Source of the DNA: Lytechinus pictus
Taxonomy: Eukaryota
Direction of reading: 5' to 3'
Length of the DNA stretch: 64,000 nt
Assembly (NCBI RefSeq): GCF_037042905.1
Contig: NC_087263.1
Coordinates: 1,488,001-1,552,000, forward strand
Shown: piece by piece, positions 4,201 through 52,643 of the stretch
Layout of the letters: each line of letters starts with the position of its first letter
Numbering within the stretch: the stretch's first letter is position 1
Translations under genes and position numbers: made by a program
The notes under the pieces: model-generated
The model's database searches: none
What the model was told of the DNA's origin: nothing
The model's input: the letters and a program-made list of their open reading frames with translations, nothing else

Positions 4201-6214
4201 TTTGATCGAGGGGTAAAGCAACATGAAGAAGGGGGGGGGGGGTGATAGAGTGAGAGAGAGACTGAGTGTGTGTGTAAGAAAGAGTGAGAAAACGAAAGAA
4301 TTAAGAATGAAATAGAGAGCAAGAGAATGAAAATGAGAGAGAAAGGTTTAGAGGGGTAAGAAATCGGACGAGGGACAATGTCTTACAAAAAGACAAACAC
4401 AAATTCAGGTAAAATGGAAGGAAGGGAATTAAAGAAGAGGGCGAAAGTGAAAATGATGAAAAGAAGACAAAACAAAAACAACAGAATAAAATCGAGATGG
4501 GGCACAGTTAAAAGGTGACTACTAGATGTGTAAACAAAGAATGTAATGAATGCAACAGAGAACGATCACGTGTAAAACTGAAATAATATAAACTGCGGAT
4601 ACCCCATGGGGAGAGAGAGAGCAAGTTGCTTTAAAAAATACCTAAAACAAGTGTATGGACCGACTAGGCCCGGCATATCTTTATAAGTAAATCAAACTTA
4701 AATTTTACGGAATGTGATTAGAATTACAACGCCATGTACAATAAATTTCCATAAGGTTTATTTTCTTTTCTTTTCGGGGGGGGGGGGTTACAAAAAAGCA
4801 TCTGCCTTATAGCAATGAACTCAGGTTGAAAGACTTAACATATGATCATTCAGTTGATGGGGAAAATATAACAATAATTTATTAATTTATAAAGAGTAGA
4901 GCTGAGGATTCCTTTCGATTTTTAATACATTACACATGGTGTATTGTAAGAGAATTCACGAATTATGACAATTCTGACAAGCAAATAAAGGGTTTGCTAT
5001 GGTTTCAACGCAATTTCAATCTATAGTTATACTATACTCAAGGCTAGCGTACTTATGTCACAAAGCACTATCGAGGAATAATGAGCACGCCATATATCAT
5101 TTGGAACGTACAGAGCTTAATTTGAAACAGTTCTTTTGCATTATCACAACATTGATAGTTCATTTTCCATGGATTTAGGCTGTGACAAAGCATGTCTATC
5201 GTCTCCTATACATCAATGTGTTGAGAATGATAACTTAATGAAATTCATTTGTCGTATTGGTAAATCAAAGTTGTCGCCGATTAATATGTTATCTTTAGCT
5301 TTGCTTTCTGATTCATCTCAATAATACGAATTGTTTTGACAATATCTGGTTTGTAATTGAAATAAAATATGTTTAGGTTAGAATTTATACAATTTGCAAA
5401 GTAAGACAAACAAATTGTCATCCGAAGTAAGGAGGTTTCCATCAATAATGGAAAAGCTAATTTATTCATATCCTTTTATTATGCGCAATAAATGAAGAAT
5501 ATATACAATCAAACTTCTAGTTACTTCATCAAAGACCCTAAGCTACAATACAAGTTAGATTTCAAATTTTAAATAGATTATTCAGCATCATCAGAATTTG
5601 CAATTGATATATAGGCCTATAATATATACATAAAGCAGTTCAAATCTATATGATAATAAAATCATCATTTCTTTCTGCATTATATACAAGTTCTGCAGTC
5701 AAATACATATTTCTTCAAATAAATACATTTGAAGTAATAAATTTCAGCTGTCAAAAATGCATACAAAATTGTTTTTACTTAAATTCAAATAGTTCAATAT
5801 ATTTTAGATTAAGTCACACAGAGTTTTAATAATTTTTATAAAACCTAAAAAAAAATTGTTCATTAAATATTCAGCATCACCTATTACTTACATATGTAAA
5901 ATAAAAATACATCAACTTATATTAGTTCTTGTATACATTAAATGGCAATATTTCATATATAATCTCATAGAAAAACAAAATTCAGAATAAGTTATTCAAT
6001 TATTATTTTTCTTCTTGTAACGCACCATTGAAGTATCGGGGAGGTGAATTAACTCCAAATAGTTTTGTAAAAATATTGTATTTTTAATAAAGACTTGTAA
6101 CGCATTTTACACCGTCATACCCTCTCTTTCTTCATATATAGTTTCATCTACCAAGCCAATTAATATTTTCTTTGATTGGAAAACTAGATTATAAAAAGAT
6201 AATAAGATAATATA

Positions 6215-6380
6215 ATAAATAACATTAATGAAGCTCCGATTATCTAGTCTAGTTGCCTTTATCTCCTACTGCTAAGAGGCGTTTGGTGCATTCAAGGAAT
6301 TGATGTCGGGTACCAATTCATCTCACCTGGGTGGAGTGAACACAATGTGGGTTAATATATTGCTGAAGGAAAACACACCA
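6215..6380 (-). mobile_element. Probable SINE fragment in the deaminase 3'UTR
   Basis: gggtaccaattcatctcacctgggtggagtg resembles a common invertebrate SINE core in reverse orientation, with an (aat)-rich tail on its left. Confidence 0.4.
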
Positions 6381-6716
6381 TCTCTCGTTAATTGTTGTAA
6401 TATGCCGTTACTGCATAGCAAAGAAGTTTCAAGAATATTTTTGAATAAATTTTGAATGCTAAAATGCATCCTTATTATTGATTCATAGCCATCCTTTTAT
6501 GGTTGCTAATGAAAATGAGTTGCCTCGCAACCGTTGCTATAATACTCAGTTTATTTCGGCGCAACCCCTGAAAATGTTATTGTGAACCTGTGTGCCAAGT
6601 TTTTCCTAAATTTTCCATTAATTTAGATAAGGTATTAACAGCTACTACATGTAGCAGTCTCTCCTCTGCTATTATGTGCAAAGATTCATGCTTTTAGCAC
6701 AATATAAATATCAATT

Positions 6717-7824
6717 TCATAAAAGCATTGAATATAAATACTCAGTCAACATATCTTCAGCGGCGTCTCTTTCTTCCTGAAGAGGTGGTTGACGAGGAGG
6801 CTGTCCAGGAGGTGGAACATGAGGGCGACGAGGTATCGCTGACTGTAGCTCATATTCATCTTCTTCTCCGTCATATTCATCTTCTTCTCCTTCATATTCA
6901 TCTTCTTCTTCGTCATATTCATCTTCTTGTCCGTCATATCCATCTTCTTCTCCGTCATATTCATCTTCTTCTTCGTCATATTCATCTTCTTCTCTGTCAT
7001 ATTCATCTTCTTCTCCGTCATATTCATCTTCTTCTCCGTCATATTCATCTTCTTCTCCGTCATATTTATCTTCTTCTATATATTCATCTTCTTCGTTATA
7101 TTCATCTTCTTCTCCGTCATATTCATCTTCTTCTCCGTCATATTCATCTTCTTCTTCATCATCTTCATCTTCTTCGCGCATTTTATTGTAATCCTTCATC
7201 ATCCATTCATCCTCCCAGTCACGCCACTTTCCGTACCACGTTCCATTACGAATGGCGTCCAGGTCTGTCAGGTTATGCGTCTCATCTATTTCCTGCATCT
7301 GTATGTCGTACTTGGTCAGTATCCATACCAGCTCGTCCCAGTCTTTCTTTTCGAAAGGTGACGCACGTAACTCAATAAGTTTGGGGAATGAGTTGTTTGT
7401 TTTGCAGCATATAACACATGACGGTCTTTTTATCCTATAGAATCCACTAAATCTAATCGTTACTTGTTTAAACAAGCGCTGAAGTTCCTTGAGTAGAGTG
7501 CTGCATTTATGACCTTCGTCATTACATGGCGAATAGTTTATGAACAGTTTAATGTTTGCATCATCTGGATATCCCTTTTCCTCGATGCGTTTGAGCAAAA
7601 TCTCCTCTGCGTGTAACCCACCCGGCTCGTTCCTTTCTATGATCACGTGCCTACTAACTCTGAAGTCTGTATCATCATCACCGGTGGGCTCGGTCTTGGT
7701 GATGAGACAGACGCATACAGCATGGATGTCTTTCCACTTCGCAAACCGACCCCCATACGGATGCAGGTTGCACTCAATAAACTGTTTCAGGATCTTCCAG
7801 CCATTTGAGTCTTCGTCATGAGCC
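6717..7824 (-). CDS. Terminal coding exon of an AID/APOBEC-like (APOBEC4-like) zinc-dependent cytidine deaminase with an acidic repeat tail
   Basis: The open frame (ORF 6717..7958) has N-x5-HAEE (His codon 7613-7611), LFINYSPCNDEGHKC (Cys codons 7526-7524 and 7505-7503), IRFSGFYRIKRPSC and FEKKDWDEL. A strong acceptor (tttttatttctttcctccAG, AG at 7826-7825) precedes it, giving a phase-2 intron. The ORF-track Met at 7958 lies inside a MITE, so the first ~45 aa are probably intronic. Confidence 0.85.
6849..7175 (-). repeat. Coding 21-bp tandem repeat, ~15 units, encoding (EEDEYDG)n
   Basis: The plus-strand unit tcatattcatcttcttctccg is repeated in frame within the deaminase ORF without stops. 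Confidence 0.95.
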
Positions 7825-7891
7825 CTGGAGGAAAGAAATAAAAAATGCATAACATTTACTAGACGCACAGGAAAATTTTTATGTATTAATA

Positions 7892-8029
7892 CCTTGGTCA
7901 CATTTGCTCTACGGCGGCCGTACGACGAGTCGAAAACAGCCGTTTTATTCATTTTCATTCAAATCACTATAATGTATAGCTGGTACAAAAAATGTTAAAA
8001 CGGCTGTCGTAGAGCAAATGTGACCGAGG
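7892..8029. mobile_element. MITE flanked by TA
   Basis: TIRs ccttggtcacatttgctctacg / cgtagagcaaatgtgaccgagg, with TA on each side. Confidence 0.8.
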
Positions 8030-8058
8030 TATAAGGGACCAATTAGTCGGTGAGATCT

Positions 8059-8277
8059 GGCCCTTGTTACAAAGAGTTATGATTGATCCAATGGATGGCC
8101 AGTAACGTCAATATCTACATGAATGTTTTCTAAATATGATGTATATTAGATTCATACATTCGTTTTCTTGAAAATCAATGTGCTTCTCTTCATTGTTTAC
8201 AAAGGAAAGCAATCACGATGGATTTTCATGCAGTTGTGGTTGATCGGATCAATCGTAACTTTGGAAAGCAGGGCCCT
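8059..8277. mobile_element. MITE with imperfect TIRs
   Basis: ggcccttgttacaaagagttatgattgatcc ... ggatcaatcgtaactttggaaagcagggcc. Confidence 0.65.
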
Positions 8278-8369
8278 GAGCTGAAGTTTTGTTATCATGA
8301 ACAAGTTGCGTAGATGTATGTAAATAAAGAATTGATGCAAAAGTGAAGCGTGAGTACATATATATGTAT

Positions 8370-8372
<3 letters not shown>

Positions 8373-8436
<64 letters not shown>
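8373..8436. repeat. (TA)n microsatellite
   Basis: About 30 TA units. Confidence 0.98.
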
Positions 8437-8439
<3 letters not shown>

Positions 8440-8504
8440 TTTAAAGAATAGCTATTATCTGTTCACTGTAGTCATTAACCCCTTACATTGTGTCTTTTGT
8501 TTGT

Positions 8505-8820
8505 TTCCGGCCAGCCATTAAATGGTATTACGACGCAGCTACGCAAGCACCGTGATGTCATAGAATTACCATTATTGCACCGTCGGTATTGCACCACCGT
8601 TGTGTCATCGCCGCGTATCGGGATGACTTCCGGTCGATCACACGACGCAGCGACGTTGCACGGGCATATGATACGATGCACAAAAAAAAACATTGCACCA
8701 CCGTGGCGCAATTGTCACGTGTAGGATACGATGCACAAAACAGACGTATGATTTCTGCACAGTTTCCTATTGAAAAAGTGATCTTTCTCCGCCTATATAC
8801 CAGCAGATATGTCAAGGGTC
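8505..8820. mobile_element. Diverged fragment of the Maverick-derivative arm (subterminal region)
   Basis: Matches ~49560-49960 (ttccggccagccat..aatggtattacgacgcag..gcaccaccgtggcgcaat..taggatacgatgcacaaaa). Confidence 0.85.
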
Positions 8821-9656: not shown

Positions 9657-12600
9657 TGTAGCGAACCAGTCCGCTACGGTTTTTGGTTATAATGCAGTAA
9701 ACGTAGATGGCGCTATAGCATTTGGTGCGTTAGAACTCAATGATCGACTTACGCAACGCACTGCGTAAGGCAGCTCTCGGGGACTATAAATAGCGGAGTT
9801 TCGCAGTAGAAACCCTTCGCAAAGCAGGCCGAAATCAAAAAGCCAAAAACCCAGTTCCTTGGTGGACACTAGAATACCAAGAAGCAATTAAAGAAAGAAA
9901 TAAATATAGAAATCGATTAAATAGACATTTTAGAAAGGAGGACTTGGAAATGTATCGAAAAAGAAAGCGTATGCCCAAAAAATAAAGAGACGAACACAAA
10001 AGGAATACTGGTTAAATTACTGTCAGTCTTTGAAGAGAACATCCAACTTAGGAAAAGTATGGGAAATGGTAAAAGGACTACAAAATGGTTCTGTCTCAAA
10101 ACATATATTTCCCAATTTATTAACAGAAAACAATACACCAGTAGCTAATGCTCAAGAAAAGGCAGAATTGGTTGCTAAGGCTTTTAAAACGATAGACAAT
10201 CGATTAGACAATGACGAGATTATTAGAAGAAATTCATGTGAAAATTTAATACAAAATACGATCAAAGAAAGCTGCTCCTCTGAATCACCTCTTGATGATG
10301 AATTTACATATGATGAATTAACAAGCGCTGTTAAAGAAATGAAAAATTCTGCAGCAGGAACAGATGGAATCAAACCAATTATGATACAACACCTACCGAA
10401 AATAGCTCTTTAGTTCATATTAGTTTTAGTAAACAATATTTGGAATTCCTCAATTCTACCCTCAGATTGGCATTATTCTACCCAGATCCCTGTACTTAAA
10501 CCAGGCAAAGACCCAACAAACCCTTCTTCATATCGACCTATTTCCTTGACATCAACTTTCTCCAAACTGATGGAAAGAATGGTTAAAAATAGACTTGTAT
10601 GGTTTATGGAGCGATGCAGTATCCTGACACCAACACAGGCAGGATTTAGAAAAAATTGAAGTTCTTTAGATCAGCTCCTTAGATTAGAAACGGACATACA
10701 GAAAGGATTAGCTAACAAGGAGTATGTCCTAGTTATTTTCATTGACCTTGAAAAGGCATACGACCTTTTATGGAGAAAGGGAATAGTATTTAAATGTCAT
10801 CAAGCTGGTATAAAAGGAAAAATGTTACAGTGGATTAATTCATTTTTACAAGATCGATATTGCAAGGTAAAAATTAATGGCCAGTTATCTTCACAATTTG
10901 TTCTGGAAAATGGAACGCCCCAAGGTAGTGTTATTAGTCCAATTTTGTTCAATTTAATGTTGAATGATCTAAAACTGATAGAAAAATCTGTTAAAATCTC
11001 TATGTATGCCGATGATATTGCAGTATGGTGCTCAGGCAGAAATCTTGACTTTTTACAAAAGAAAATGCAAAAAGCTATAAAAGAAATTGAACAGTGGTGC
11101 TCAACCTGGAGTATGATTATTTCACCTCAAAAGTCTGCTGTTATGATTTTTACCAATAGGCAGCATATAGAGGTAAATATTAAGGTTAAAGATAACTCTA
11201 TACCACAATACAAAGAATATAAGTTTCTGGGTATTTGGTTTGATGTGAAACTCACCTGGAAAAAGCACATCGATTATATAAAACTCAGATGTTCAAAAAG
11301 AATCAATTTGTTACGGTGTATAGCAGGAACAAGTTGGGGAAATAATAAAACGATTCTTTATATAATATACAAAGGTCTTATTAGATCCATATTAGACTAC
11401 GGATGTGAGTTATACGGCTCGGCTAGCCTTTCGCTAAAACAAGAATTAGATTCAATCCAATATCAGTCACTGAAAATAATAACTGGTGCAGTATATAACC
11501 CTGCCCTTGAAGCACTACAGGTAGAATGTGGTGAAAGACCTTTACAACTAAGAAGAGAACTGTCTGTTGACAAATACATGTTTTATCTTTTAACAAACAG
11601 AGATAGTCATCATCCTACTTTAGAAATTATTGAACCTTCCTGGTATACTGATACATTTACTTGGAAATCAGGTCGTGGACCCTTTGTAGTCAGAGCATGT
11701 AAGCCAAATGAAGAGATCCAAATTGAACAACTAAGCCAAAGAATATTACGAGAACCTTTTTGGTCATATGAAATACCTAGTATATCTTACTATATCCATA
11801 AGATTATCAATAAACAACGTAACTTAGTACAAGATATGAAAAACTGTGTCTCAGAAAGGATACATACAAGATGGAAAGGTCACTTAAATATCTACACTGA
11901 TGGATCAAAACAAGAAGACAAGAGAACCGGCTCTGCTTTTTATATACCAGAACTGGATATTAAAAGATTCTATAGATTAAATTCTGTAAGTATAATGAGA
12001 GCCGAATTAACAGCAATAGTAATGGCACTTGATTGGCTAGGAGATAACAGAGGTATGTCCGTGGTAATTTTTACAGATTCGTTGTCTGCTCTTCAAGCAC
12101 TTGAAAGCAATCGTATACAAAACAATCTTATTGTTGATATCTTGTATAAAATCAAAGTTTTACAATTATCAGATATTTATGTCAATTTTGAATGGATACC
12201 ATACCATTGTGGTATTAACGGGAACGATGTGGCAGACCTTTTAGCAAAAAAAGGAACATCAAAAGAACAAGTTGAATTAAACATTCCATATATCAAAGAG
12301 GAATGGAAAACCCACATGTCTTTGATTTATAAAGAAATCTGGCAGGCTCAATGGGTATCCTCATCTAAAGGAAGACATTTATTTAGCATCCAACCCAACG
12401 TGGCAGATACAATTAGTTATCAAGGTCTCATTCGGTTTGAAGAGACTATGTTACACCGTTTAAGACTCGGAAAATGTAAATTGAATTATTATCTGTATAA
12501 ATTTAATCAACATGAAAATGGTCTATGTTCCCATTGTCAGGTTCCTGAGACAATAGAACATTTTTTACTACAATGTAAGAAATATGAAAGTGGAAGAAGA

Positions 12601-13579
12601 ATTATGCAAAGAAGCCTGAAATTAAACAAGCCAATATCAGATCTGGCAACATTATTGGGAAGAAATGCAGATTATAAAGTCATCCTGAATTACGTGAAAA
12701 AAACAAAGAGATTCGAATAAGAATATTCCACTGATCTCTCTCCATCTCTTTCTCTCTCTCTCATCCTTTTGTTCTGATGATTAGTGATAATTCTTAGACT
12801 ACTAAAATTGAGCTTCGACCTAGCTTCTTATATACGTTTGCATACTATGAAGTACAAAAACGCACAATTTAATGGTGGTGGTAACTAATCATAATTATAT
12901 TGCACCTCGCTATATGACAGGTCAGACTAGTCTAACGCCGAGGACATTGATGCGGGAATTAAGCAACTAACTCGACTCGGAAACGACCTGGCGCAGATAA
13001 TCTACCAGATTGAAGAGCGCCAACTTAACTCCAACACCAACCAACCCGATCTCGTCACTTCGACGGCGGCTGAGGTCGGAGTCGGACGAAGAACTCCCTG
13101 CGCTCCTCTCCAACTGGGCTGAATCAAGAAAAGGTTTGGAAATGAACATTGCTCGCTTAATTTCTACTACTGCAAATACAATTCTGTATAATTGGTGACG
13201 GTGTTAATGGTGATAACATGTAAGAGATGCTGAATGTATAATTAAATTATGACCGTTGTCATAAACCAAATGTAATCATCGTCTCCAATCTGTGTGATCT
13301 ATGGAATCCGATTGACTTCTACAGTATAAGCCTTCCCATAGAGATTATACAGCCCCAATAGAAATCCTCTGTTCAGACTACCCCTCAACACTCCACCCCC
13401 ATATATTTTGGGAAAACGGAACACGCCCGGGTCTCTACATTACGCCATGTATACAGATATAAGGAAACCGCTCGCATTAAGGATGGCTAGTAATTCATCA
13501 ACGGATGAAGGTGATAGAGGCAAGGGACAAGCCGGCCCCCCAGCATCCAGGATCCGTTCAAAGATGGAGGGCCGCCACA
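9657..13579 (+). mobile_element. Gypsy solo LTR (TGTA...CACA, TSD TTAT) interrupted by a LINE
   Basis: 9657-9810 and 13049-13579 align to the LTR at 44943-45833. TTAT lies at 9653-9656 and 13580-13583. TATA box ctataaata at ~9784. Confidence 0.92.
9810..12978 (+). mobile_element. 5'-truncated I/Nimb-clade LINE (RT, RNase H, CCHC) with premature stops
   Basis: PVPWW, SYRPISLTS, DLEKAYD, GTPQGSVISP, YADD; RNase H IYTDGSK/RAELTAI/FTDSLS/WIPxHxGIxGN; CSHC-x8-H-x4-C; 3' end ttaagcaactaactc. Stops at 10411 and ~10657. Confidence 0.92.
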
Positions 13580-14195: not shown

Positions 14196-15883
14196 TTGAA
14201 ACCAGTAGATGACTCCTTTAAATCAACTTCATTCATCCGCAGTACAGATGGTGATAACATGAAACACTATACAGTCAAGGATGATTCTTTATTCTTTTCA
14301 TTTATTCTATTCCATTTCAATGTAGATAGGTTCAGATATTGTATAAACAACATATTTTGATACAAAGGTAAAATAATGTAAGTTATGTTCTCAAATTATG
14401 TTGTAATAACAAACTAATTGTTAACTGTTCATTGTTAATATTAAAGTGAAGTCCTCGTTTTTCTATTTCTTCGCTTAACTTAATGGATTGTAGCACATGT
14501 CTATGGATGGCATTCAGAAAATATGAACACAATGAAGTTCAAACTGTCATTTATGTTGACGGCGTTTTCTTGGATTATTATTATTGAGTCGACAAGCTGA
14601 TGTTTGTGCCTTTAGTTGTAGACTCCATCTTCACCCTCCGTTTCTTCTCCACCATCGTCATCGTCACCTTGATACTGGAATAAACCATCGATTTGTGAAC
14701 CATGCCTGGCTAACACTCTCTGTACGACTTTCCGGAATTCCATGCCATTCTCTAATCTTTCCGTGAGATCGGACACGATTTCATGATTGATGTCAGCGTC
14801 TTCGAGGTAAACGTTCTGCTGCAAGAACTGAGAGTAAAGATCGAAAAAGATGCGTTTGACTGCCCACATTAGTTTCACGTGAGCCTTTGCTTTAGCGTCT
14901 TCTTCTTCCATTCCTTCTGAGATGTATTAGTGATATTTTTCGTCTCTCAAGTCCTTGGTGGCCGTCATGGCTTTCTCTAACCATCCTCGATAAGCGAGGT
15001 TGTCTTCAGTTTCTTCCATGTTTGCTATCATTGACCGTCGATTCGTGTCCATCGCTTTCTGATACACTCGTTTCGGAATCATCGTTGGATTCTTCAACTC
15101 TTTGCATTTGGGAGGGTGGGTCAGAGTCTTCATCTTCACTCGTTTCTTCTCCAGTATCATGCTCATTTTGTTCATGCCTCTGCGTATCATACTTCCTACT
15201 AAAAGTTTTATCGCATCGTGAACAAGCGTAACGGTTGGACATATCCAACGTATTCATGTCGACTCAATGATTATTTGTTGGGAAATAATGAAGAAAATTA
15301 ACGTTCAACCTTGTAATTATACGTAATCATGAAACGCACGCGAAGGTACTTTGATCCTTACGGATTCTTACAGACTTTTACGGATTCTTACGGATGTTTA
15401 CGGATTTTTACGGATTCTTACGGATGTTTACGGATTTTTACGGATTCTTACGGATGTTTATGGATTCTTACGGATTCTACGGATTAATCAATGCTTTCAT
15501 ATAATCTCAAGGAAAATATGTTCATCCACGTTGGAATGACCCATGCAGCATGGATCATTCCAACGTGGATCCGTAAGGATCCGTAAAAATCTGTAAGAAT
15601 CCATAAGAATCCGTAAAAATCCGTAATGATCCGTAAGAATCCGTAAGAATCCTTAAGGATCCGTAAAAATCCGTAAGGATCCGTAAGAATCCGTAAGAAT
15701 CCGTAAACATCCGTAAGAATCCGTAAACATCCGTAAGAATCCGTAAGGATCCGTAAGAATCCGTAAACATCCGTAAGAATCCGTAAGAATCCGTAAACAT
15801 CCGTAAGAATCCGTAAGAATCCGTAAGGATCTGTAAACATCCGTAAGAATCCGTAAAAATCCGTAAACATCCGTAAGAATCCG
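14196..15883 (-). mobile_element. Older truncated copy of the fold-back Maverick derivative (broken C2H2 ORF plus inverted satellites)
   Basis: Aligns to the arm at 50238-51400. The zinc-finger ORF is fragmented (15006..15257, 14927..15190, 14612..14911). Satellites at 15350-15482 and 15568-15883 are in opposite orientations. Confidence 0.92.
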
Positions 15884-15885
15884 TA

Positions 15886-23400: not shown

Positions 23401-26323
23401 GTTTAATTAAAGTAAGGAGAGCTTTGGAGATTGAATTTACAGGAGAGCATAGGAGACTTAAGTGCAAGAGTTTATGATATTGGAAGTGTACAAACGGTCA
23501 TGTTACAGCACCAACAGCATGAAATGTAGAAACTGTAAACAGACTGGCCACGTATACAACACTTGCACATCAAACGGAGACACAGCCACACCCAGCGAGT
23601 AACGTAACACCACAGCTGATCGTGAACCCGTGAGAACGCCATGAAAGCCGGACCCACATCACGTGATCAAGCCGCGACAGCCAATGGGGCTCGCCCGAAG
23701 GAGAGAATGCATACGCCACAGAGGTATACACAACAAGCTGACGCAACGTCACCTTCTCGCAAACAACGTCAACCACACATCACGGGCTTTCTTCGTACAC
23801 ACATCGTCACAGTCTGATGAGCAATATAACACAAAAGACGTAGCAAATGAATGCGATTTAGGAGACGAAACATCGAGCGAGGCCGACCAGTTTCAATCGC
23901 CTTTCTCACCTGAAACCCCGACACCGAAAAATTCCAACAAAAAACCTCCGAAGCGGAAAAGAAAGGATCAAACACAGGAAGATAAATTGATCGAAACAAA
24001 TGATGGAAAAGAATGAAAGAACGCCGGAAAACTCAACCCTACTAGCATGGCTATTAACTCGGTCGATTTCGGTCAATGTCAGAGGAATACGAAATAAAAA
24101 GAAACGAGAAAAAATATTCAAATGGTTAGGCTTTCAAAAATATATCGTTTTGATGCAAAAAAAAATATAACCAAGGACCTTGGACCAATATTAAATATAG
24201 AAAGAAAATGTTCATTATTTTTTAACAATGGTACCAACCATTCAAAGGGTGTTTTAATTGGAATAAATGATGGTTTACCTATATAAATCATAGAATGTAT
24301 TAGACAGCCCGGTGGCCGTGTGATTGGTATTTGATTATCTTACAGCAATAAGTTTTATTTTATTGTAAATGTTTATGCTCTGACAAAACCATCGGAAAAG
24401 TCGAATTTTTAAAGGTTTACTTTCATGACTGAAAGCACAAGTACATAAAGATGATTTGCTATTATTGGGTGGAGACTGGAATTCAGTTCAAAGTTCATGT
24501 ATGGACACCAAAGGAATAGGTTATGCATTTAAACCTAATGACCTGTTGCAAAATATATGTAAAAAGTTAAACTTAGTAGACATCTGGATAAAATGTCACC
24601 CTTCACTCAAACAATTTACTTGGCGGCAATACTTACTTGGCTATTACTACCGATTAGACTATTGGTTGATATCATATAATTTATGTTCATTTGTTCATTC
24701 CGCAAATATAAGACCCATTCTGAAATGTGATCACAACGCTGTGTCTCTAAAACTTACAATTTCATCTTCAGGTAAGGGCAAAGGTATATGGAAATTAAAT
24801 AACTCACTTCTTAGAAACGACATATTTAAAGAAACAATCAGAAATATCATAAAGAAAGTAAAACTAAAATATAAAAACTATAATGATCAAATGTTATGGG
24901 ATTTATGCAAGATTAAGATCAAAGAATATTCAATAAAATACTCAAAGACAATACAGAAGAATAGAAACCAAATAAATAATACCTTGCAAAGTAAGCTTGA
25001 AATCCTTTCGGAAGCAAATGATGCTCACCCGAGTGACAATAATCTCACTGAACTTAACGATATTACTAAGCAGATTGATAAATTAATTGAAGATAAATGT
25101 AAAGGTGCCTTTGTGAGACCCCGTGACAAATGGATGGAAGAAAGCGAAAAATCATCAAAATATTTTCTCAACTTGGAAAAAAGGAACGGGATAAAGAAGC
25201 ATCTAGACTTTTTGAAACGGGATAAAGATGTCATTTTTGAGGAAGAAGCCATTTTAAAAGAAATCTATGAATACTACCAAAATCTATATTCAAATAAGAA
25301 TAATGTTCTTGTAACAGAAATATATGATTATTTGAATGATGTTTAGTTTACTACCCTGTCGGAATAAGAAGCTGACCTTTGTGAAGGTTTACTTACAGAA
25401 TCCGAGTGTTACAAAGTATTGAAGTCAATGAAAAGTAACAAGACTCCAGGTAGTGATGGATTATCAGCAGAGTTTTATCAATGTTTTGGCTGGGCATAAA
25501 GTATATGGTTATCAATAGTTTGAATGAAGGTTACAGAAAGAATAAGATATCAGAATCTCAAAAGCAAGGTATTTTGAAATTGTAACATAAAAAAGGTGAC
25601 AGAGGTTTACTTGACAATTGGCGTCCTATATCACTTCTAAACATCGATTACAAAATTGCAGCCAAAGTCATTTGTTGACGTCTTCAACGTGTTATCGATA
25701 AAATCTAAGGATCAAACTGGTTATCTAAAATTGCGTTCAGCTTCAGAAAATGTTCGTTTAGTTGAAAATGTAACTGATCTTTGTTCACTGGTAAATTCCA
25801 GGTTCCAGGTTATTTCATATATTTAGATTTCAAAAAAGCTTTTGATAATGTTAACCATCAATCTTTATTTCAGTTATTACATGAATTGAAATTCAAAGAT
25901 TCACTTATTAATTGAATTAAAGTTCTGTATAATGATGCTTCCGGAATAAGAGTGATTAATAACGGGTGGATGCCACAAAATATACACAACAAAAAAAGTA
26001 AGTCCCCCTAAATCAAATTGCTGTAACTTTTGAACAGAATTATTTTGAGATATGATATTTCGGAGGTGGTTTTATACACTCATTGAGCAACCCCTAGGGA
26101 AAAATGAGATTTATCGGTTGAGTCAGGCATGATTAATTAAAGATTGAATCAAAAATGACCATTTTTGAAAGTCACAAGAGTCGTTTTTCAGATTATGCAA
26201 ATACAAAGTTGGGCAAAAGTTGTTGTTAGGTGAGTTGTGTTAATACTGTTTTACAATCCATCATTTAGCCACTCCACACACAATTTGATATCGTATGTTC
26301 ATGGTTGAGAGATCACAATATTG

Positions 26324-26730: not shown

Positions 26731-29700
26731 GTTTGTTTGTTTATGTTTGTTTATTTATTATCCGATTATTAAAAAACATGAAATATAAATTAGATAAATA
26801 CATAACATAAATGGCATTAATAGAAATAAACAAAATGAATTGCAAATGAATAGATAGAATAAAATAATCGAAAGGATTGCCCATTTCAGAGTTATTGACA
26901 TAAATCACTCTGGTCTTCCATGGGGTCCATAAAAAAAATATATTAAAATACATTGCAATACAAGGAAAATTTGATATTGAAAAAAAAAAGAAAAAAAAAG
27001 GTATGAAAGAAAAAAAAAGATATATATATAAAACATATATAATTGAATGTATCAATTAATAACCCCCACCAACAATACATATTATCAAACCAAAACCTAC
27101 TTTATCACCCCCCCCCCCCCCCCCTCTGTGTGAGCAGCAATAGAGATGCTAACATATGTGGTTTATAAATCAACCAAGTATTCATCTATTAGTCTATTGA
27201 ATTCCTTAAGTGTGCCAGATTGGCGAATTCTTATCGGTAATTCATTGTATAACACAGTTGCACGATACATAAAAGTTCGTTTGCAATTGTTGGTTCGCGG
27301 TTTAGGAAGAGCCAACAGGCCTGACGTTCTGAAGTTATATTTGTTTTCCTTAATAACAAAGTTCTCCTTCATATACCCAGGAGCCAAATCATGCATTATT
27401 TTATACATAAATGATAACATGTGTCTCTTTCTTCGCTTACATAGTTGTTCCCAGTCCAGCAGACTATGAAGTTCAGAAATAGATTTATGTTCATATGGGT
27501 TTATGCCTAAAATTATTCTAGATGCTTTGTTTTGGAGTTTTTGAAGTTGTTCTAACAAAGTCATACTGGTGGATTGCCAGACTACATCAGCATAGTCAAA
27601 ATGGGGTAAAACAACAGTGTTGTATATTATATTCAAGTTTGAAGTACTCATAAAGTGTCTAAGTCTACACAAGAAATTTATCATTTTTCCTATCTTCTTA
27701 CACATGTTATCTACCTGCAGATTCCATTTCAATTCTGAGTCAACAAGAACACCGAGATATTTGAAACTTTTAACTTGAGTTAAGCGAACACCATTTAAGT
27801 TTAAATCTATACAACCATTCTTAGTAAGCATTTTTTTTTCGAGCCTATCAACATACAAACAGTTTTGTCACAATTTATTCTTAACTTGTTTTTCTTCATC
27901 CACGATTCTAGTACTTTCAATTCCTTATTCATTGTTGTTTGTAAAACTCGTGGTTCTTCATGTGAAAAATATACCACAGAATCGTCTGCATATAAATGTA
28001 CAGAACATTTGTTGAAACATTTGGGCAAATCGTTAATAAATATAAGGAACAACAGTGGACCTAATAAGGACCCTTGTGGAACACCGAATTTGAGAGGCTG
28101 TTCCTCTGACATTGCATCATTTACTGATGTGATAATTGTTCTACCTGATAAGTAACTTTTGAACCAGTTAAGAGCTATATCAGTAATCCCAATTTTCTCA
28201 AGCTTATGCAAGAGGATCTTATGATCCACAGTGTCGAATGCTTTTTGCAGGTCTACAAAAACAGTTCCAGTGTACATTTTGTTATCAAGAGATCTGAGCC
28301 ATTCATCTGTAACCTTAATCAGGGCAGTGCATGTCGAGTGCTTAGATCTAAATCCTGATTGTTCTTTTGTTAAAATAATATTTGCATGAAGATAATGAAT
28401 TGTTTGCTGTTGAATGACCTTTTCCAAAAGTTTAGAGACCCATGGCAATAGCGAAATTGGTCTATAATTGTCCGGTTGTGTTTTATCACCTTTTTTAAAT
28501 AATGGTAATATCTTGGTATATATATTTTCCAACGTTTAGGGACTATACCTTCTGTAATGGATTTATTTATCAGAAATGTCAAGGATCTAAGCACTACTGG
28601 AGCAGCTGCTTTCAAAATGAATGAACTAATGCCATCAATGCCAACAGATTTTTTATTTTTTAAAGAATAAATTAATTTCAACACATCGATTTCTGACGCT
28701 GGAGATAGAACAAAAGTTTCACGAAATGTACCTGTATTTCCATTGCAATTAGTTTCTATAACGTCATTAAAGTTTTCAGCACCAGCCCTTAATTTTTCAG
28801 CAATACTTGCAAAGTGATTGTTAAAATCATTTGCTAGAGTGATATTATCATGTGCATTACTTATAAGAGGTGGAGAGGAGCTTCTATTTGGTACAAAAGA
28901 TTTCAAAATTTTCCAAGATTTGTTTCGGTCCTTACATTCACTTAATTTCTCAGAATAATACTTCTTTTTATTTTTCCTAATCTCTAATGTGACTTTATTT
29001 CTTAAGCGTCTATATTCATTCCAGTAAACATCCTGTTTTTGTGCCTTGCCTTATTTTTCATTTTATCACGAGATTTTATAAGTTCAAATATTGAATCATT
29101 AAGCCAAGGGGAATGTTTCTTTCTCACACGCTTGGTTTTCATAGGCATGTGTTTGTTGACAACCTCTAACAGAAGCTCCTCCCATTTGTTAACTGCTGTA
29201 TCAATGTTATCACAACCTTCAACATCATTCCAATTTTGAGCTCTTAGATCTGCTGTGAATAAATCCATATCAATTCCATTAGATTTTCTAAATGTAACAT
29301 ATTTTGGACTCGATTGGAGACTTTTACAAGATTTCCATGATAAATAGCTCATTGAGTGATCACTTAAACCATTATCAATTACACCAAAGGCATTTATTTT
29401 ATCAAGGCAATTTGTGACCATGTGATCGACAAGTGTCGATGTCTCATTTGTTACCCTTGTATATTGAACTGTATTAATCTGATGCATACCATGTATGTTA
29501 TTTATCTGTAAGTATTTCTTTCTTTCACCTGTTGTTGGATGTTTGCTAATATCAATATTAATATCACCCATCAAGATTTCAGAGTAATTAAAAGCATCCA
29601 TAAAAGTTAACAAATTGTCATATGCTGAAAGGATATCACTCTTCGAGTTAGGTGGTCGATACCAATTTAAAAGTAGCAATTGTTTAGAATTTTTCAGATT

Positions 29701-31549
29701 AATAGAAATCAGAATGGCTTCAAGATTTTCCATGGAGTTGTGAGACAGTTGCTGATGGTCAATATTATTGCAAATGTACGTAGCAACACCACCTCCATTC
29801 CTGTCTCTGCGTATCACAGTATAATTAGGTATATTAATTTCATGACTGCTAATGCTATCATCTAGTCTTGTTTCATTCAATGCACAGATATCAATGTTGT
29901 TACTGTACAGTATTGATTTGACTTCGTCCAAGTGTTTGAGTAGGCTGACAACATTCAACTGAATACATCTCATGCCCTTAGTATTTAACAATTGATTATA
30001 TTTCAAATCATTGGTCATATTTACCCTTTCATTTAAATTTTCACATAAATCTTCAGAAGTAGTGGATGATATTGATATATCGTAGAATGGTAACCCTGTA
30101 GGATACATCTGGAGCATTCCCAATCAACAAACTGCACTAAAGTATTAGTATATAAATTTGAAGTTACACTAGTACATGACAAATGAATCCATTTCCGACA
30201 AGTAGTACAAAGTAATCCCTTTTGGTTGACTTTAACAGAGTTCTCACATATTCCACAAGGAAACTTCTTACCCATCACACACACTAAATCCCAACTAAAA
30301 TGATGAAGTAAAATGAAGTAAAAGAATTCAACACTTTAACAACTTAACACACATTAATAATAAAAGTGTCTAAAAATATCCCTGTAAATGATGCGTATCT
30401 CCCAGGAATTTAGGTCTGGCAAGTCACTAAATGATTCACTCTAAGAGTGACTTTCACAATCATCATCATCGTAAGTTTTTAGCTTCTTCTACAGATCTTA
30501 CAAGTTTCTTGACGGTTGACCCATTGCTTGAAAGAAGAGCAACAAAAATGCGCCCGTCGGTGGACCACGCTGCTGAGACTTTTGCTGATTCTCTTGCAGT
30601 CTTCAAGATGGTATAATTTGCTGCCGTAAGGTCCTCTGAGATTGAAATCCCCGAGTTTTTCAGCTTTCGACGCGCATGTAGTACAGCCTGACGAACACGA
30701 TATGTTGCGAATTTGACTATAATTGGTCTGGGGTGGGTCACTTTACCAGATGACGATGACACCTTACTTGCCCACGACGATGACTTGGAAGTTGATGACG
30801 ATGCAGCCAAAGAACTATGAGCAGCTGAGGCAGTCAGGCCATCTTGTGAGGTATCAGGTTCAGATACATTCCGGGTCTTCGACGATCCAATTCGATGACT
30901 ACGATCGGCATCTTTGATGTTCAGCTCAACTCCAAGTTTCTCATGTGCAATATTAAGAATAATGTTATCTGTATTTTCTCCATTTGTCTCAGCAATTCCA
31001 AAAACCCTTACGCAGTTTCTTCTTGAATATTGTTCTGCACTCGAGATATACTTCGAAGGGTAGATATTTGCTCTGATTGCTCAGATAGCTTTTTCTCCAA
31101 CTCACAAATCTTCTTTGATTTAGTGTCATGTTCAACAAGCAAAGACATGATGTTAGATTCATTCACATCAATTCGAGAAGACAGCTTACCTAGTTCTTGT
31201 TGGAGCACTTTAAATTCTTCCCTAACAGCTTCCTTTACGTTTTTTTTTACAAGGTCTAGAAATTCATGATGCTGAGTCAGTTCAGTAACAAGGCTCTGTT
31301 GAGGTGGTTGAGATTGAGAGGAGTCCAATTGCTGCTGAGACTGTCTCGTCTGTCTAGTAGAAGCACTAAGTTTTGACATTGTTGTACAGTGTTTGCGATC
31401 CTAGTATTACTGGCAATCAGTGTAAAATATTTGGCGGCAAACACTGAATACGCTAGTTCATCGGTTTCGATTCATGCAACGCATCAGACCACGGCGATAA
31501 CAATGGCATGTGTGTAGCAATGCAAAACCTTTCCCGATGTTAACGCAGC
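26731..31549 (-). mobile_element. Near-full-length CR1-clade LINE (ORF1; PHD-EN-RT ORF2; frameshifted), candidate TSD GAAAGTGT
   Basis: ORF1 coiled coil and PRPIIVKF..ISEDLT (31008..31379, 30466..30810); PHD CGIC..CTTCRKWIHLSC..CSRC (30033..30284); EN (29002..30123); RT DLQKAFDTV, GVPQGSLLGP, YADD (27807..28532); (AAAC)n tail; gaaagtgt at 26723-26730 and 31550-31557. Confidence 0.93.
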
Positions 31550-45965: not shown

Positions 45966-47081
45966 ATGGAGATCGCACAGATGAGGAAAAATCAAGCCAA
46001 GTTAGCTCAGGACGAGATGATGAAACAGCAAGCCAATGCCCAGGTCATGATGATGCAACAGGTTCAAGCTATGCAATCACAGTTGGAGAAGCTGCTTTTG
46101 TCATTCTCTAATGAGCAAAGTAAGCCTACCAGACATGCCAGACGGAGACGAAGAAAACTGAGCGCTCGGGGAAGCACATATAGGTCTACACAAACAGCAT
46201 CATCAACCGAGGAGGAGGAAGTCCCATCCAATACTACTTTACGGAATAGTAGATGCAATCCTATTGATTCACCAGTACAAAATGCTGCCAGGGAAACGGC
46301 ATCAACAGCGGTGCAACCAACTGTTGTTAGGGGACCCTCCAATAATGACAGTAGGCTCCACGCCATAATCCATCAAGCATTTAAAGATACACTCCAACAT
46401 GGGCAGACGTCTAAACCAAGGTCATCACAGGACGCCCAACAGAAGCCTAGGGGTACCCACTTTTTCAAACCAGACAAATATGATGGATGTTCATCATGGA
46501 TTGATTACAGCAAACATTTCGACTCATGCCAAGCAGTGAAGGGTTGGGATAATAAAGAAGCGGGGAGGATCCTGCCATCATGCTTAAGAGGTCAGGCCCA
46601 AAGGCTGCTACGGGAACAAAGGCAGACAGTAGGCTTCAATGATCTGAAGAGAATGCTGGCCAACCGGTTCTCAGATAATAAACAGGCTGAGAATCATCTA
46701 CTAGAGCTGAAGCAAAGACAGAGACAGGAGGGCGAGACACTCAACATGCTCAAGGAGCTTGCGCAAAACATCAAGGAGCTCACCGCATTGGCCTATCCAG
46801 AGCTGGACTTTGATGTCCGTGACAGACTGGCGAAGGGTCACTTCATCGATGCCCTTGTGAAACCCAAGCTCAGAGAGGCAGTGTTCAACAACCAATGTAA
46901 GACATTGGATGATAATGTACATGCTGCAGTGGTAGCTGAAGTCTTCCATCATTCTGAGGATCAGAGAAGGAGCAGGAAACCTAAGTACAGCAGGGCAATG
47001 ACAAAGAAGAATGAGGAAGTTAAAGCAACTGAATCAATCTCCGAAGTAAAAGCCCTGATACCTGGGTTGGAAGAAAAATAA
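45966..47081 (+). CDS. gag: Gypsy Gag (degenerate; the zinc knuckle CYYCGKKGDMKRRC lies beyond the stop, at ~47186-47227)
   Basis: KPDKYDG..W..Y..HF..C...GW, CLRGQAQ, RQRQEGETL..LA..I..L...AYP, HFIDAL. Confidence 0.85.
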   Translation: MEIAQMRKNQAKLAQDEMMKQQANAQVMMMQQVQAMQSQLEKLLLSFSNEQSKPTRHARRRRRKLSARGSTYRSTQTASSTEEEEVPSNTTLRNSRCNPIDSPVQNAARETASTAVQPTVVRGPSNNDSRLHAIIHQAFKDTLQHGQTSKPRSSQDAQQKPRGTHFFKPDKYDGCSSWIDYSKHFDSCQAVKGWDNKEAGRILPSCLRGQAQRLLREQRQTVGFNDLKRMLANRFSDNKQAENHLLELKQRQRQEGETLNMLKELAQNIKELTALAYPELDFDVRDRLAKGHFIDALVKPKLREAVFNNQCKTLDDNVHAAVVAEVFHHSEDQRRSRKPKYSRAMTKKNEEVKATESISEVKALIPGLEEK

Positions 47082-47418
47082 GCAGAGGCAATCAGGACCG
47101 CACAACAGCCGCAACCTCAGACTGTGGTATCTAGTGACAAGCAACAGCAGCAGCAGGGGAATTCAAATAATAGTTCGATGGTAGCTGCTACTACTGTGGA
47201 AAGAAAGGCGACATGAAGAGGAGGTGCAAAAAGAGGAGGAGGGATGAGGTTCAGATTCACCAAGCCGCGCAGGGCTCAACAAACGAAGTAAGGTCGCCCC
47301 AGGGGGCGTGGCGCGGCCGAGGAACCTGGAAGCACCAGCCCCTCAACACCACATACTACACAGCCAATAGTTACAACTAGGTACAATGGAGAAGTCAACA
47401 AGGGGAATTTAGAAGGAC

Positions 47419-47994
47419 ATGTGTGTGCCAGTCACTATCGGTGGGACACAGCTAAGTTTTCTGGTAGACACAGGAGCAACGGATACATACATATCCAAGG
47501 AAGGCTATGGGAAACTACAAGAGAAGTCTACAATTCAAACTACTACAGAGAATGTTATGCTTGCCGACGGCTTACACCTAGAGGTGGATGGAAAGATCCA
47601 CACAGAAGTGATGATAGGCCAGGGGAAGGCAAGGATCACTCTGATCGTCGCTGATATCTGTAGCGATGGAGTCTTAGGCATGGATAATCTTCTGCTGTTA
47701 GGAGCAAGGCTTAACTTGGAGACTGCTACAATGGAAACCAAGTGGGGTTCAGTTCAGTGTCGCCATGAAGACAACACTAGAACTTGCTTCCGCATCATAG
47801 CTACTGAGATGTACACCATACCGGCAGGCCGAGAAGGCATCATTACAGGAAAACTACTGGACGGGGTTTCGAAACATCAAATGATAGACGTCAACTTACA
47901 CAGAAAGGCATCATCTTGGCCAGGACCCTCATCAGAACTGGTAATGGAGCAGTCCCAGTTAGAGTGTACAGCCCTAAAGCATCCCAACGTGTGA
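47419..47994 (+). pseudogene. pol: Gypsy aspartic protease (5' part of pol)
   Basis: FLVDTGATDTYI and VLGMDNL motifs, followed by frameshift and stops. Confidence 0.88.
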
Positions 47995-51390: not shown

Positions 51391-52643
51391 TGATTCTTGC
51401 GGATTTTTACGGATTCTTACCGATTTTTACGGATTCTTACGGATTTTTACGGATTCTTACGGATTTTTACGGATTCTTACGGATTTTTACGGATTTTTAC
51501 GAATTTTTACGGATTCTTATCGATTCTTACAGATTTTTACGGATTCTTACGGATTTTTACGGATTCTTACGGATTCTTACGGATCCTTACGGATTCTTAC
51601 GGATTTTTACGGATTTTTACTGATTTTTTACGGATTTTTACGGATTCTTACGGATTCTTACGGATTCTTACGGATCCTACGGATTTTTACAGATTTTTAC
51701 AGATTTTTACAGATTTTTTACGGATTTTTACGGATTCTTACGGATTCTTACGGATCCTTACGGATTCTTACGGATTTTTACGGATCCTTATGGATTCTTA
51801 CGGATTTTTGCGGATTTTTACGGATCCTTACGGATTCTTACGGATTTTTACGGATCCTACTGCTTCTTACGGATTTTTACAGATTTTTACAGATTTTTAC
51901 GGATCCTTATGGATTCTTACGGATTCTTACGGATTTTTGCGGATCCTTACGGATTCTTACGGATTCTTATGGATTCTTACGGATTTTTATGGACTCGGGT
52001 CCCATATGCGGCATGGGTCATTCCAACGTGGATGAACATACATGTATTTTCCTTGAGAATATATGAAAGATTATATGAAAGCATCAATTAATCCGTAGAA
52101 TCCATAAAAATCCGTAAGAATCCGTAAAAATCCGTAAGAATCCGTAAGAATCCGCAAAAATCCGTAAGAATCCGTAAGAATCCATAAGGATCCGTAAAAA
52201 TCCGTAAGAATCCGTAAGGATCCATAAGGATCCGTAAAAATCCGTAAGAATCCGTAAGGATCCGTAAAAATCTGTAAAAAATCTGTAAAAATCTGTAAAA
52301 ATCCGTAAGAAGCCGTAGGATCCGTAAGAATCCGTAAGAATCCGTAAGAATCCGTAAAAATCCGTAAGAATCCGTAAAAATCCGTAAAAAATCTGTAAAA
52401 ATCTGTAAAAATCCGTAAGAATCCGTAGGATCCGTAAGAATCCGTAAGAATCCGTAAGAATCCGTAAGAATCCGTAAGAATCCGTAAGAATCCGTAAAAA
52501 TCCGTAAGAATCGATAAGAATCCGTAAAAATTCGTAAAAATCCGTAAAAATCGGTAAGAATCCGTAAAAATCCGTAAGAATCCGTAAAAATCCGTAAGAA
52601 TCCGTAAAAATCGGTAAGAATCCGTAAAAATCCGCAAGAATCA
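51391..52643. repeat. Inverted pair of 10-bp satellites, (GGATTCTTAC)n 51391-51992 and (GTAAGAATCC)n 52091-52643, around a ~100-bp spacer
   Basis: Directly visible; variants ggatttttac and ggatccttac. Confidence 0.97.

What the first reader, a model, noticed from the sequence alone, without database searches (positions are those of the whole stretch)
6717..7175. Deaminase fused to a ~110-aa acidic, Tyr-periodic tail (EEDEYDG)x15, then a Pro-rich linker and a terminal helix
Seen: a frame-preserving 21-bp VNTR gives a strongly polyanionic tail with a Tyr roughly every 7 residues, followed by PRRPHVPPPGQPPRQPP and an amphipathic end (AAEDMLTEYLYSMLL). Unit-length variants (18-nt units) also keep the frame. 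Inference: regular aromatic residues on an acidic backbone resemble a ssDNA/RNA mimic that could autoinhibit the basic substrate groove (RIKRP, KWK). The DEY repeats are also candidate tyrosine-kinase sites, and the terminal helix may be an export or docking signal, by analogy to the AID C-terminal NES. Repeat number could tune mutator activity. I do not know of this architecture in the family.
Basis: inference. Interest (0 to 1): 0.75.

Follow-up and report, generated by a model that had tools for sequence, protein, structure and literature searches.

The report
Young polyacidic repeat tail on deaminase
A sea-urchin-type AID/APOBEC-like DNA/RNA-editing enzyme gene has recently grown an in-frame 21-base repeat that adds a 109-residue, extremely acidic, tyrosine-dotted tail; the tail is real and unusual for the family, but what it does is untested.

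Summary
On the minus strand, 6849-7175 is a 21-bp coding minisatellite: 12 units of 21 nt and 2 of 18 nt after a D/E seed. It encodes 109 residues (79 D/E, 15 Tyr spaced 7 or 6 apart, net charge about -77). It lies between a confidently folded AID/APOBEC-like deaminase core and a Pro-rich linker with a terminal helix.

- The 413-aa ORF start is false. Its first 45 codons are intron and high-copy repeat. A splice acceptor sits at 7826-7825, and the real protein is about 369 aa with a split ATG (by homology). No signal peptide is seen.
- The array is young and lineage-specific. All units use the same codons. It is absent from the Lytechinus variegatus orthologue, which keeps the flanking C-terminal peptide (23 of 26 identical), and from six of the seven other paralogues found.
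- The array is shared only with a copy 31 kb away that is about 1% diverged and looks like an unequal-crossover hybrid.

Transcript-like contigs are spliced exactly at the acceptor and cover both array flanks. Three raw RNA runs show no expression.

The most likely effect is electrostatic damping or autoinhibition of nucleic-acid binding (inferred, untested); a neutral passenger is nearly as likely. One distant family member has an independent polyacidic, Tyr-dotted tail at the same position.

The parts
6717..7824 (-). Large terminal coding exon of the deaminase gene. It holds the last base of a split ATG, 368 codons and the stop at 6717-6719.
   Evidence: Acceptor at 7826-7825. Five paralogues share the same cag|G GCT junction. 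The L. variegatus RefSeq protein starts M-A-R-K-C-D at the equivalent point. An X1 contig matches 7419-7824 with 0 mismatches and then leaves the window exactly at 7824.
7825..7958 (-). Intron 3' end with a repeat-derived pseudo-N-terminus. The in-frame ATG at 7958 creates the misleading 413-aa ORF.
   Evidence: Residues 1-41 of the ORF hit more than 100 places in the genome. The paralogues align only from ORF residue about 39 to 48 onward.
7176..7823 (-). AID/APOBEC-like deaminase core plus conserved helical C-terminal extension (residues 1-216). Features: HAE 71-73, PC 99-100, C107, loop-1 H21, loop-7 C136/C139/C140.
   Evidence: Pfam. AF2 pLDDT above 90 for most of residues 11-220. Top Foldseek matches are APOBEC3H, APOBEC3F and AID. 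Conserved columns.
6849..7175 (-). Coding 21-bp minisatellite giving a 109-aa polyanionic, Tyr-periodic disordered segment (residues 217-325).
   Evidence: Absent from the orthologue and the other paralogues.
6777..6848 (-). Pro-rich linker (residues 326-349), conserved with the L. variegatus orthologue.
   Evidence: 23 of 26 identical residues across the segment that follows the array. pLDDT below 50.
6720..6776 (-). C-terminal amphipathic helix (residues 350-368). Its last 10 residues fit the class 1a NES pattern.
   Evidence: AF2 helix 348-367 at pLDDT about 70. Pattern match in this protein and in the orthologue.
6153..6716 (-). Probable 3' UTR.
   Evidence: X1 contig covers 6153-6879 continuously with 0 mismatches. 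ATTAAA at 6088 and AATAAA at 6555 on the minus strand. The exact 3' end was not determined.

Best explanation
Shown here:
- The stretch is the 3' third of the main coding exon of a classical, non-secreted AID/APOBEC-like cytidine deaminase of an echinoderm. It belongs to the group with a His in loop 1 and a Cys-rich loop 7.
- A 21-bp coding minisatellite has expanded from a short D/E seed, exactly between the deaminase's last conserved helix and a conserved Pro-rich and NES-like C-terminal peptide.
- The expansion inserts a 109-residue polyanion of charge about -77 with a Tyr every 7th residue, predicted disordered.
- The expansion is evolutionarily very recent. It was then copied once by unequal crossing-over, which made a hybrid gene 31 kb away.

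Inferred, not shown:
- The array is translated.
- It acts like the D/E-repeat tails of other nucleic-acid-binding proteins. The tethered polyanion competes with and repels nucleic acid at the deaminase's binding surface.
- This would lower non-specific binding and so restrain a potentially genotoxic mutator until something neutralises or displaces the tail.
- Because any change in unit number keeps the frame, tail length can vary without destroying the protein.
For: Anatomy:
- Repeat structure and composition.
- The array is in frame, and the peptide downstream of it is conserved with L. variegatus in the same frame (23/26 identical). The reading frame must therefore run through the array.
- There is no GT dinucleotide in the array on the coding strand, so no canonical donor site lies inside it.
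- Both indels among units are 3-nt multiples.

Recency:
- All units use the same codons, and every difference between units is nonsynonymous.
- The array is absent from the orthologue, from L003-L007 and from L008, whose locus has no open frame of 180 aa or more.
- The pattern occurs only in the two genes.
- The two copies' tails have equal length and differ at 2 adjacent bases.

Duplication:
- L002's upstream 9.7 kb is 99% identical to L003's upstream.
- L002's gene body and 7.3 kb downstream are 98.4-99.3% identical to this gene.

Deaminase identity:
- Pfam, profile search with 197 relatives, AF2 core, Foldseek top matches APOBEC3H/3F/AID.

Transcription:
- X1 contigs cover 6153-6879, 7179-7444 and 7419-7824 with 0 mismatches. 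The last leaves the genome exactly at the acceptor. Coverage drops to 0 at 8301-8700 and to 0-0.78 at 10301-10900, as expected for RNA.

Mechanism by analogy:
- D/E repeats in DNA/RNA-binding proteins cause autoinhibition through intramolecular electrostatics (PMC10250230, abstract).
- A distant family member, P0073 (25% identity in the core), carries an independent D/E tail of about 115 aa with DEDY, GDEY and GEEY motifs starting at the same position. This suggests recurrent acquisition.
Against: - No functional data of any kind.
- The core is not basic overall (net charge -4, pI 6.0).
- AF2 places the array as low-confidence coil.
- Youth, codon homogeneity and absence from the orthologue fit a neutral slippage product equally well.
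- Three raw RNA-seq runs (about 6% of each sampled) give zero depth over 6501-7700, so expression is at best restricted.
- X1 is only guessed to be RNA, and its contigs break at both array edges. The array itself is not seen contiguously in a transcript.
- Exon 1 was not located, so the start codon rests on homology.
Confidence: 0.45

Rival explanations
1. Neutral passenger. The array is a recent replication-slippage or unequal-exchange expansion in an already disordered, tolerant linker. It is translated but has no selected role, and any damping of nucleic-acid binding is incidental.
For: Identical codons in all units and only nonsynonymous differences between units. Absent from the orthologue and the other paralogues. 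The fast-evolving family shows many different tails: basic, Pro-rich, short acidic. The insertion site is a low-confidence linker.
Against: Two in-frame copies are retained with the conserved C-terminal peptide. There is an independent polyacidic, Tyr-dotted tail at the same position in P0073. A -77 charge next to a nucleic-acid enzyme is unlikely to be without biochemical effect.
Confidence: 0.3
2. Polycation-binding module. The acidic array binds basic partners, such as histones or other nuclear basic proteins, or basic viral or retroelement nucleocapsid proteins. It would then target the deaminase or act as a chaperone rather than folding back on its own core.
For: Composition alone (72% D/E). 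The core is not basic overall, which weakens an intramolecular target. The analogy to acidic histone-chaperone tails comes from general knowledge and was not tested here.
Against: No partner was identified. No homology to any chaperone. The Atlas search gave nothing.
Confidence: 0.1
3. Phosphotyrosine scaffold. The 15 acid-flanked Tyr are substrates of acidophilic tyrosine kinases, and phosphorylation recruits SH2/PTB proteins or switches the tail.
For: All 15 Tyr codons are intact, with Tyr at a regular 7- or 6-residue spacing and acidic residues on both sides. P0073 also carries D/E-flanked Tyr.
Against: Tyr conservation across units is not significant: by my own calculation, about 0.2 chance that 10 substitutions all miss the Tyr codon. 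There are no kinase or phosphoproteome data. Nothing here tests it.
Confidence: 0.07
4. Not a functional protein segment. Either this copy lacks a usable first exon or start codon, or the gene is silent or decaying, and the open frame only reflects youth.
For: Zero depth in three raw RNA runs. Exon 1 was not found, and this gene's upstream region shares no homology with that of L002 or L003. A high-copy repeat sits right at the acceptor. The metal-binding loop 7 is 6-8 residues shorter than in L003 and the orthologue.
Against: The frame is intact over 368 codons with all catalytic and Zn residues. X1 contigs specific to this copy (0 mismatches where L002 differs) are spliced at the acceptor. 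Related sea-urchin deaminases are reported as tightly regulated and variable between individuals (PMC5956068).
Confidence: 0.08

Closest known systems
Classical invertebrate AID/APOBEC-like deaminases: the lophotrochozoan-echinoderm clade with a metal-chelating insert from loops 1 and 7 (Krishnan et al. 2018, PMC5889660)
   Same: HAE...PC...C zinc motif. A His in loop 1 and three Cys in loop 7. Lineage-specific tandem expansions with mosaic paralogues. Found in echinoderms. APOBEC-like fold.
   Different: Word searches of that paper's main text for 'acidic' and 'low-complexity' found no occurrence. Here loop 7 is shortened, and a 109-aa acidic minisatellite-coded tail is inserted before the C-terminal peptide.
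SpAIDL1-9 of Strongylocentrotus purpuratus (Liu et al. 2018, PMC5956068)
   Same: Sea-urchin AID/APOBEC-like genes. Multi-copy, polymorphic, tightly regulated, with mutator activity in E. coli for some members.
   Different: The two SpAIDLs whose sizes are given are about 193-194 aa and were found via APOBEC_N. This protein has about 216 core residues with a long helical extension, and its own best Pfam hit is XOO_2897-deam. A direct comparison was not possible because no SpAIDL sequence was on hand.
D/E-repeat acidic tails of nucleic-acid-binding proteins, such as HMGB1 (PMC10250230)
   Same: A long, disordered, strongly negative segment tethered to a nucleic-acid-binding domain. The known effect is intramolecular electrostatic autoinhibition.
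   Different: Here the tail has a strict heptad-like unit with Tyr and Gly, is coded by a young VNTR, and sits on an enzyme whose core is not basic overall. No interaction has been shown.
AID C-terminal nuclear export signal
   Same: A Leu-rich class 1a-type pattern at the extreme C terminus of a deaminase (the AID NES itself is from general knowledge).
   Different: Pattern match only. No sequence homology to the AID tail. Export was not tested.
P0073, an unnamed family member from a public transcriptome assembly
   Same: A deaminase core of the same family with a long D/E-rich tail carrying acid-flanked Tyr, starting right after the same conserved helix.
   Different: 25% identity in the core. 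Its tail is built from trinucleotide-type D/E runs, not a 21-bp unit. The origin is independent.

Membership tests
AID/APOBEC-like deaminases (AADs) | Zinc-coordinating H[AVS]E ... PCx(n)C motif | tested here: met
   H71-A-E73, P99-C100 and C107. These columns are at least 90% conserved across 83 relatives.
AID/APOBEC-like deaminases (AADs) | APOBEC-type deaminase fold | tested here: met
   AF2 core pLDDT above 90 for most of residues 11-220. The 50 listed Foldseek PDB hits are APOBEC3, AID, APOBEC1 and APOBEC2 entries, with E-values from 6e-7 to 3e-5 and probability 1.00.
AID/APOBEC-like deaminases (AADs) | Match to curated AAD profile HMMs above threshold | tested here: inconclusive
   This protein alone: APOBEC_N 24.0 bits (cut-off 25), NAD1 24.1 (cut-off 27), SNAD4 23 (cut-off 27). 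Only XOO_2897-deam passes, at 31.4 (cut-off 27). At family level, 80 of 83 aligned relatives match NAD1 and APOBEC_N at E <= 1e-3.
AID/APOBEC-like deaminases (AADs) | Polynucleotide cytosine deaminase activity | not testable with these tools
   Needs a mutator or in vitro assay.
Lophotrochozoan-echinoderm metal-binding AAD clade (PMC5889660) | Metal-chelating His in loop 1 plus three Cys/His in loop 7 | tested here: met
   H21 lies between helix 8-17 and strand 36-46. C136, C139 and C140 lie between strand 120-125 and helix 146-151. The clade definition was read. Metal binding itself was not shown.
Secreted AADs (SNADs) | N-terminal signal peptide | tested here: not met
   The N-terminus inferred by homology is M-A-H-D-E-D-S, acidic and not hydrophobic. 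The orthologue starts MARKCDDDSDV, and L007 has its own in-exon Met without a hydrophobic stretch. Caveat: exon 1 of this copy was not located.
Coding minisatellite (VNTR) | Head-to-tail units whose length is a multiple of 3, in frame | tested here: met
   21-nt and 18-nt units.
Coding minisatellite (VNTR) | Copy-number variation among alleles or individuals | not tested
   The two genomic copies have equal length.
D/E-repeat autoinhibitory tails | Long, strongly negative disordered tract tethered to a nucleic-acid-binding domain | tested here: met
   79 of 109 residues are D/E, charge -77, coil in AF2.
D/E-repeat autoinhibitory tails | Intramolecular contact with the binding surface that lowers ligand affinity | not testable with these tools
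   Core net charge is -4. The monomer model is not informative for the array.
Class 1a leucine-rich NES | Phi-xxx-Phi-xx-Phi-x-Phi pattern in an accessible segment | tested here: met
   Residues 359-368 here and 256-265 in the orthologue. This is a loose pattern, and CRM1 dependence cannot be tested here.

The most novel reading that the evidence does not exclude
The array is a genetically tunable rheostat. It would be a length-variable, nucleic-acid-mimicking polyanion, possibly switched by tyrosine phosphorylation. It gates substrate access of a mutator deaminase in an invertebrate immune system. Such acidic gates would have arisen convergently in separate AID/APOBEC-like lineages (this gene pair and P0073).
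Probability: 0.12. Interest if true: 0.75.

Novelty: new variant of a known kind. Interest (0 to 1): 0.42.

Why it matters
AID/APOBEC enzymes are dangerous to their own genome, and how invertebrates restrain them is unknown. A polyanionic tail on such an enzyme, encoded by a repeat that can change length without breaking the frame, would be a simple built-in brake or filter that can be tested directly. A second, independent acidic tail in the family hints that this may be a recurring solution. If the tail is only slippage debris, the locus still documents how fast these immune-type genes evolve. It shows a coding minisatellite birth, an unequal-crossover hybrid gene and patchy gene conversion, all within 55 kb.

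Tried and rejected
- The 413-aa ORF start (ATG at 7958) is rejected. It is intronic and repeat-derived.
- Other-frame ORFs over the array are frame-shifted readings of the same repeat, with no conservation. These are 216 aa and 144 aa on the plus strand and 105 aa on the minus strand.
- The secreted, tyrosine-sulfated reading is rejected because no signal peptide is seen.
- PDB sequence search of the core: no hit.
- Exact-protein look-up of the L. variegatus homologue: not on record.
- ESM Atlas look-alikes of the tail: none usable.
- Word-indexed protein search with the last 54 residues: nothing. No further species or transcript fragments with this tail were found.
- Complex prediction, core 1-225 against the C-terminal 43 residues: 'no answer' (score 0.00, controls not run). 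This is not evidence either way.
- Locating exon 1 by homology: 14 kb upstream of this gene was compared with 10 kb upstream of L002, L003, L004 and L005. Only repeats were shared.
- Raw RNA runs X17-X19: zero depth over the gene body. Reads on 7700-8300 come from other copies of the repeat, since 85-91% of them run on into unlike sequence.
- Paper searches for acidic tails on APOBEC-type deaminases found nothing relevant.
- Pfam family names printed looked mismatched to their accession numbers, so they were not used.

Full report
**Observation**

The window is AT-rich animal DNA full of retroelement fragments. It lies on contig C19 of an 812-Mb genome.

On the minus strand, ORF 6717..7958 (413 aa) contains a 21-bp tandem array at 6850-7175. 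Tandem Repeats Finder gives 15.8 copies, 90% matches and score 526.

Read unit by unit, the array has three parts:
- a 12-residue D/E seed ending in Tyr;
- twelve 21-nt units, mostly DGEEDEY;
- two 18-nt units.

Together these make 109 residues with 50 Glu, 29 Asp, 15 Tyr and 10 Gly. Tyr spacing is 7 or 6, and the net charge is -77.

A two-unit DNA pattern occurs 26 times in the genome, all within this array and one other array on the same contig. The reversed control gives 0.

**Gene model**

The first 41 residues of the ORF match more than 100 scattered genomic sites, so they come from a high-copy repeat.

Just downstream is a polypyrimidine tract and CAG, so the exon starts at 7824. Five paralogues share the same cag|G GCT junction. 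The L. variegatus RefSeq homologue begins M-A-R-K-C-D at that point. The start codon is therefore most likely split (AT|G).

The protein is then M plus 368 residues, with an acidic N-terminus that is not signal-like.

I could not locate exon 1. The 14 kb upstream shares only repeats with the upstream regions of the paralogues.

**Family**

- This protein alone passes only the XOO_2897-deam Pfam threshold. It sits just under the APOBEC_N, NAD1 and SNAD4 thresholds.
- A profile of eight homologues (seven encoded in this genome plus the L. variegatus protein) finds 197 relatives.
- Of 83 aligned members, 80 match NAD1 and APOBEC_N.
- H71, E73, S98, P99, C100, C107, R133 and C136 are at least 90% conserved.
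- AF2 with this alignment gives a confident core, with pLDDT above 90 for most of residues 11-220.
- All 50 listed Foldseek PDB matches are APOBEC3, AID, APOBEC1 and APOBEC2 entries.
- His21 in loop 1 and Cys136/139/140 in loop 7 fit the lophotrochozoan-echinoderm metal-binding clade of classical AADs described in PMC5889660.
- The best-scoring database relatives, and the only named ones among those looked up, are two L. variegatus proteins. The genome is therefore from an echinoderm, most likely another sea urchin.

**Origin of the tail**

In the alignment of paralogues and the L. variegatus protein, the array is a clean insertion. On one side is the end of the long last helix (...DYNKMR plus a few D/E). 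On the other is the peptide ELQSxIPRR..VPPPGQPPRQPPLQE. That peptide is 23 of 26 identical between the two species and stays in frame.

The orthologue has only 'DDE' at the insertion site. Paralogues L003-L007 lack the array, and the eighth copy, L008 (one internal stop), shows no open frame of 180 aa or more. They carry short acidic, Pro-rich or basic tails instead.

All units use the same codons, and all ten differences between units are nonsynonymous. This points to a very recent expansion rather than long maintenance.

**The second copy**

L002 lies 31 kb away and has the same tail. The tails have equal length and differ at 2 adjacent bases.
- Its gene body and at least 7.3 kb downstream are 98.4-99.3% identical to this gene.
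- Its 9.7 kb upstream is 99% identical to the upstream of the third tandem gene, L003.
- A 100-bp patch at 7466-7565 carries 10 differences where L002 looks L003-like.

This is the pattern expected from unequal crossing-over between two paralogues, with some added gene conversion. A mis-assembled haplotype cannot be fully excluded.

**Is the tail expressed?**

- Three raw RNA-seq runs of the same species label, each about 6% sampled, give zero depth over 6501-7700. The reads they place on 7700-8300 belong to other copies of the repeat.
- Run X1 consists of assembled contigs and is only guessed to be RNA. Its coverage falls to zero at 8301-8700 and to 0-0.78 at 10301-10900.
- X1 has contigs at 6153-6879, 7179-7444 and 7419-7824 with no mismatches.
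- The last of these continues for 127 letters unlike the window, leaving exactly at 7824, the predicted acceptor.
- It is specific to this copy, because L002 differs in that interval.
- The contigs stop at both edges of the array, as k-mer assemblies do at repeats. The array is therefore not seen contiguously in a transcript, but nothing shows it being skipped.
- The array has no GT dinucleotide on the coding strand.

I read this as low or restricted expression of a spliced mRNA that includes the tail. That agrees with the tightly regulated, individual-variable expression reported for other sea-urchin AID-like genes (PMC5956068).

**Mechanism**

Shown:
- a folded deaminase core with an intact active site;
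- a disordered polyanion (AF2 coil, pLDDT 55-65);
- a very low-confidence Pro-rich linker;
- a terminal helix at pLDDT about 70.

Inferred: a -77 tail tethered to a polynucleotide enzyme should compete with or repel nucleic acid. D/E repeats do this in other DNA/RNA-binding proteins (PMC10250230).

Against a simple 'basic groove' picture, the core has net charge -4 and pI 6.0, like its tail-less paralogues.

The extreme C-terminus fits the class 1a NES pattern in both this protein and the orthologue, despite different residues. This is a modest point in favour of an export or docking signal.

A docking test of the C-terminal 43 residues on the core gave no answer.

Secretion, and with it tyrosine sulfation, is unlikely given the N-terminus. 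Tyrosine phosphorylation and binding of basic partners remain open and untested.

**Comparison and novelty**

Echinoderm AADs, their tandem expansions and their mosaic paralogues are known (PMC5889660, PMC5956068). An acidic repeat tail is not mentioned in either paper's main text.

Among the 150 best family hits, only P0073 has a comparable tail. It has about 115 residues rich in D/E with acid-flanked Tyr, starting right after the same conserved helix. Its core is 25% identical, and its tail is built from trinucleotide-type runs, so its origin is independent. A few other members have short acidic ends.

I class this as a new variant of a known kind. It is interesting as a testable candidate brake on a mutator, but it may well be recent slippage with no selected role.

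Noticed in passing
window 7830-8300: A high-copy repeat sits in the intron, directly against the splice acceptor. A 41-aa stretch of it matches more than 100 genomic sites. RNA reads pile up here, with 'opposite strands' joints between 8095 and 8232, which suggests a fold-back (inverted-repeat) element that is transcribed elsewhere. It supplies the false in-frame ATG.
   Followed up: partly
G000:C19:1440988-1495958 (L003, L002, L001): Three tandem deaminase genes lie on the same strand. The middle one looks like an unequal-crossover hybrid: its upstream 9.7 kb is 99% like L003's, and its body plus 7.3 kb downstream are about 99% like this gene. A 100-bp L003-like patch at window-equivalent 7466-7565 suggests added gene conversion.
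   Followed up: partly
window 7400-7440 (loop 7 of the deaminase): Both array-bearing copies have a metal-binding loop 7 that is 6-8 residues shorter than in L003 and the L. variegatus protein. They keep three Cys. The effect on activity is unknown.
   Followed up: no
G000:C17:2317326-2444378 (L004-L006): A second cluster of three paralogues (43-46% identity) has longer PCxxC-type loops. Their C-terminal tails are Pro-rich and, in L004, net basic (+6.9) instead of acidic.
   Followed up: no
L024 (public transcriptome contig), 117-1067: A distant family member, P0073, carries an independent Asp/Glu tail of about 115 aa with acid-flanked Tyr. The organism is not known.
   Followed up: partly
window 15353-15885, 51392-51993 and 52090-52642: Long arrays of a 10-bp satellite (GATTCTTACG and its complement) occur in opposite orientations. 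They generate long spurious ORFs.
   Followed up: no
window 10822-12720, 24456-25346, 27163-30123, 45966-47994: Retroelement ORFs: LINE-type reverse transcriptase with RNase H, endonuclease-like ORFs, and a gag/protease-like pair.
   Followed up: no
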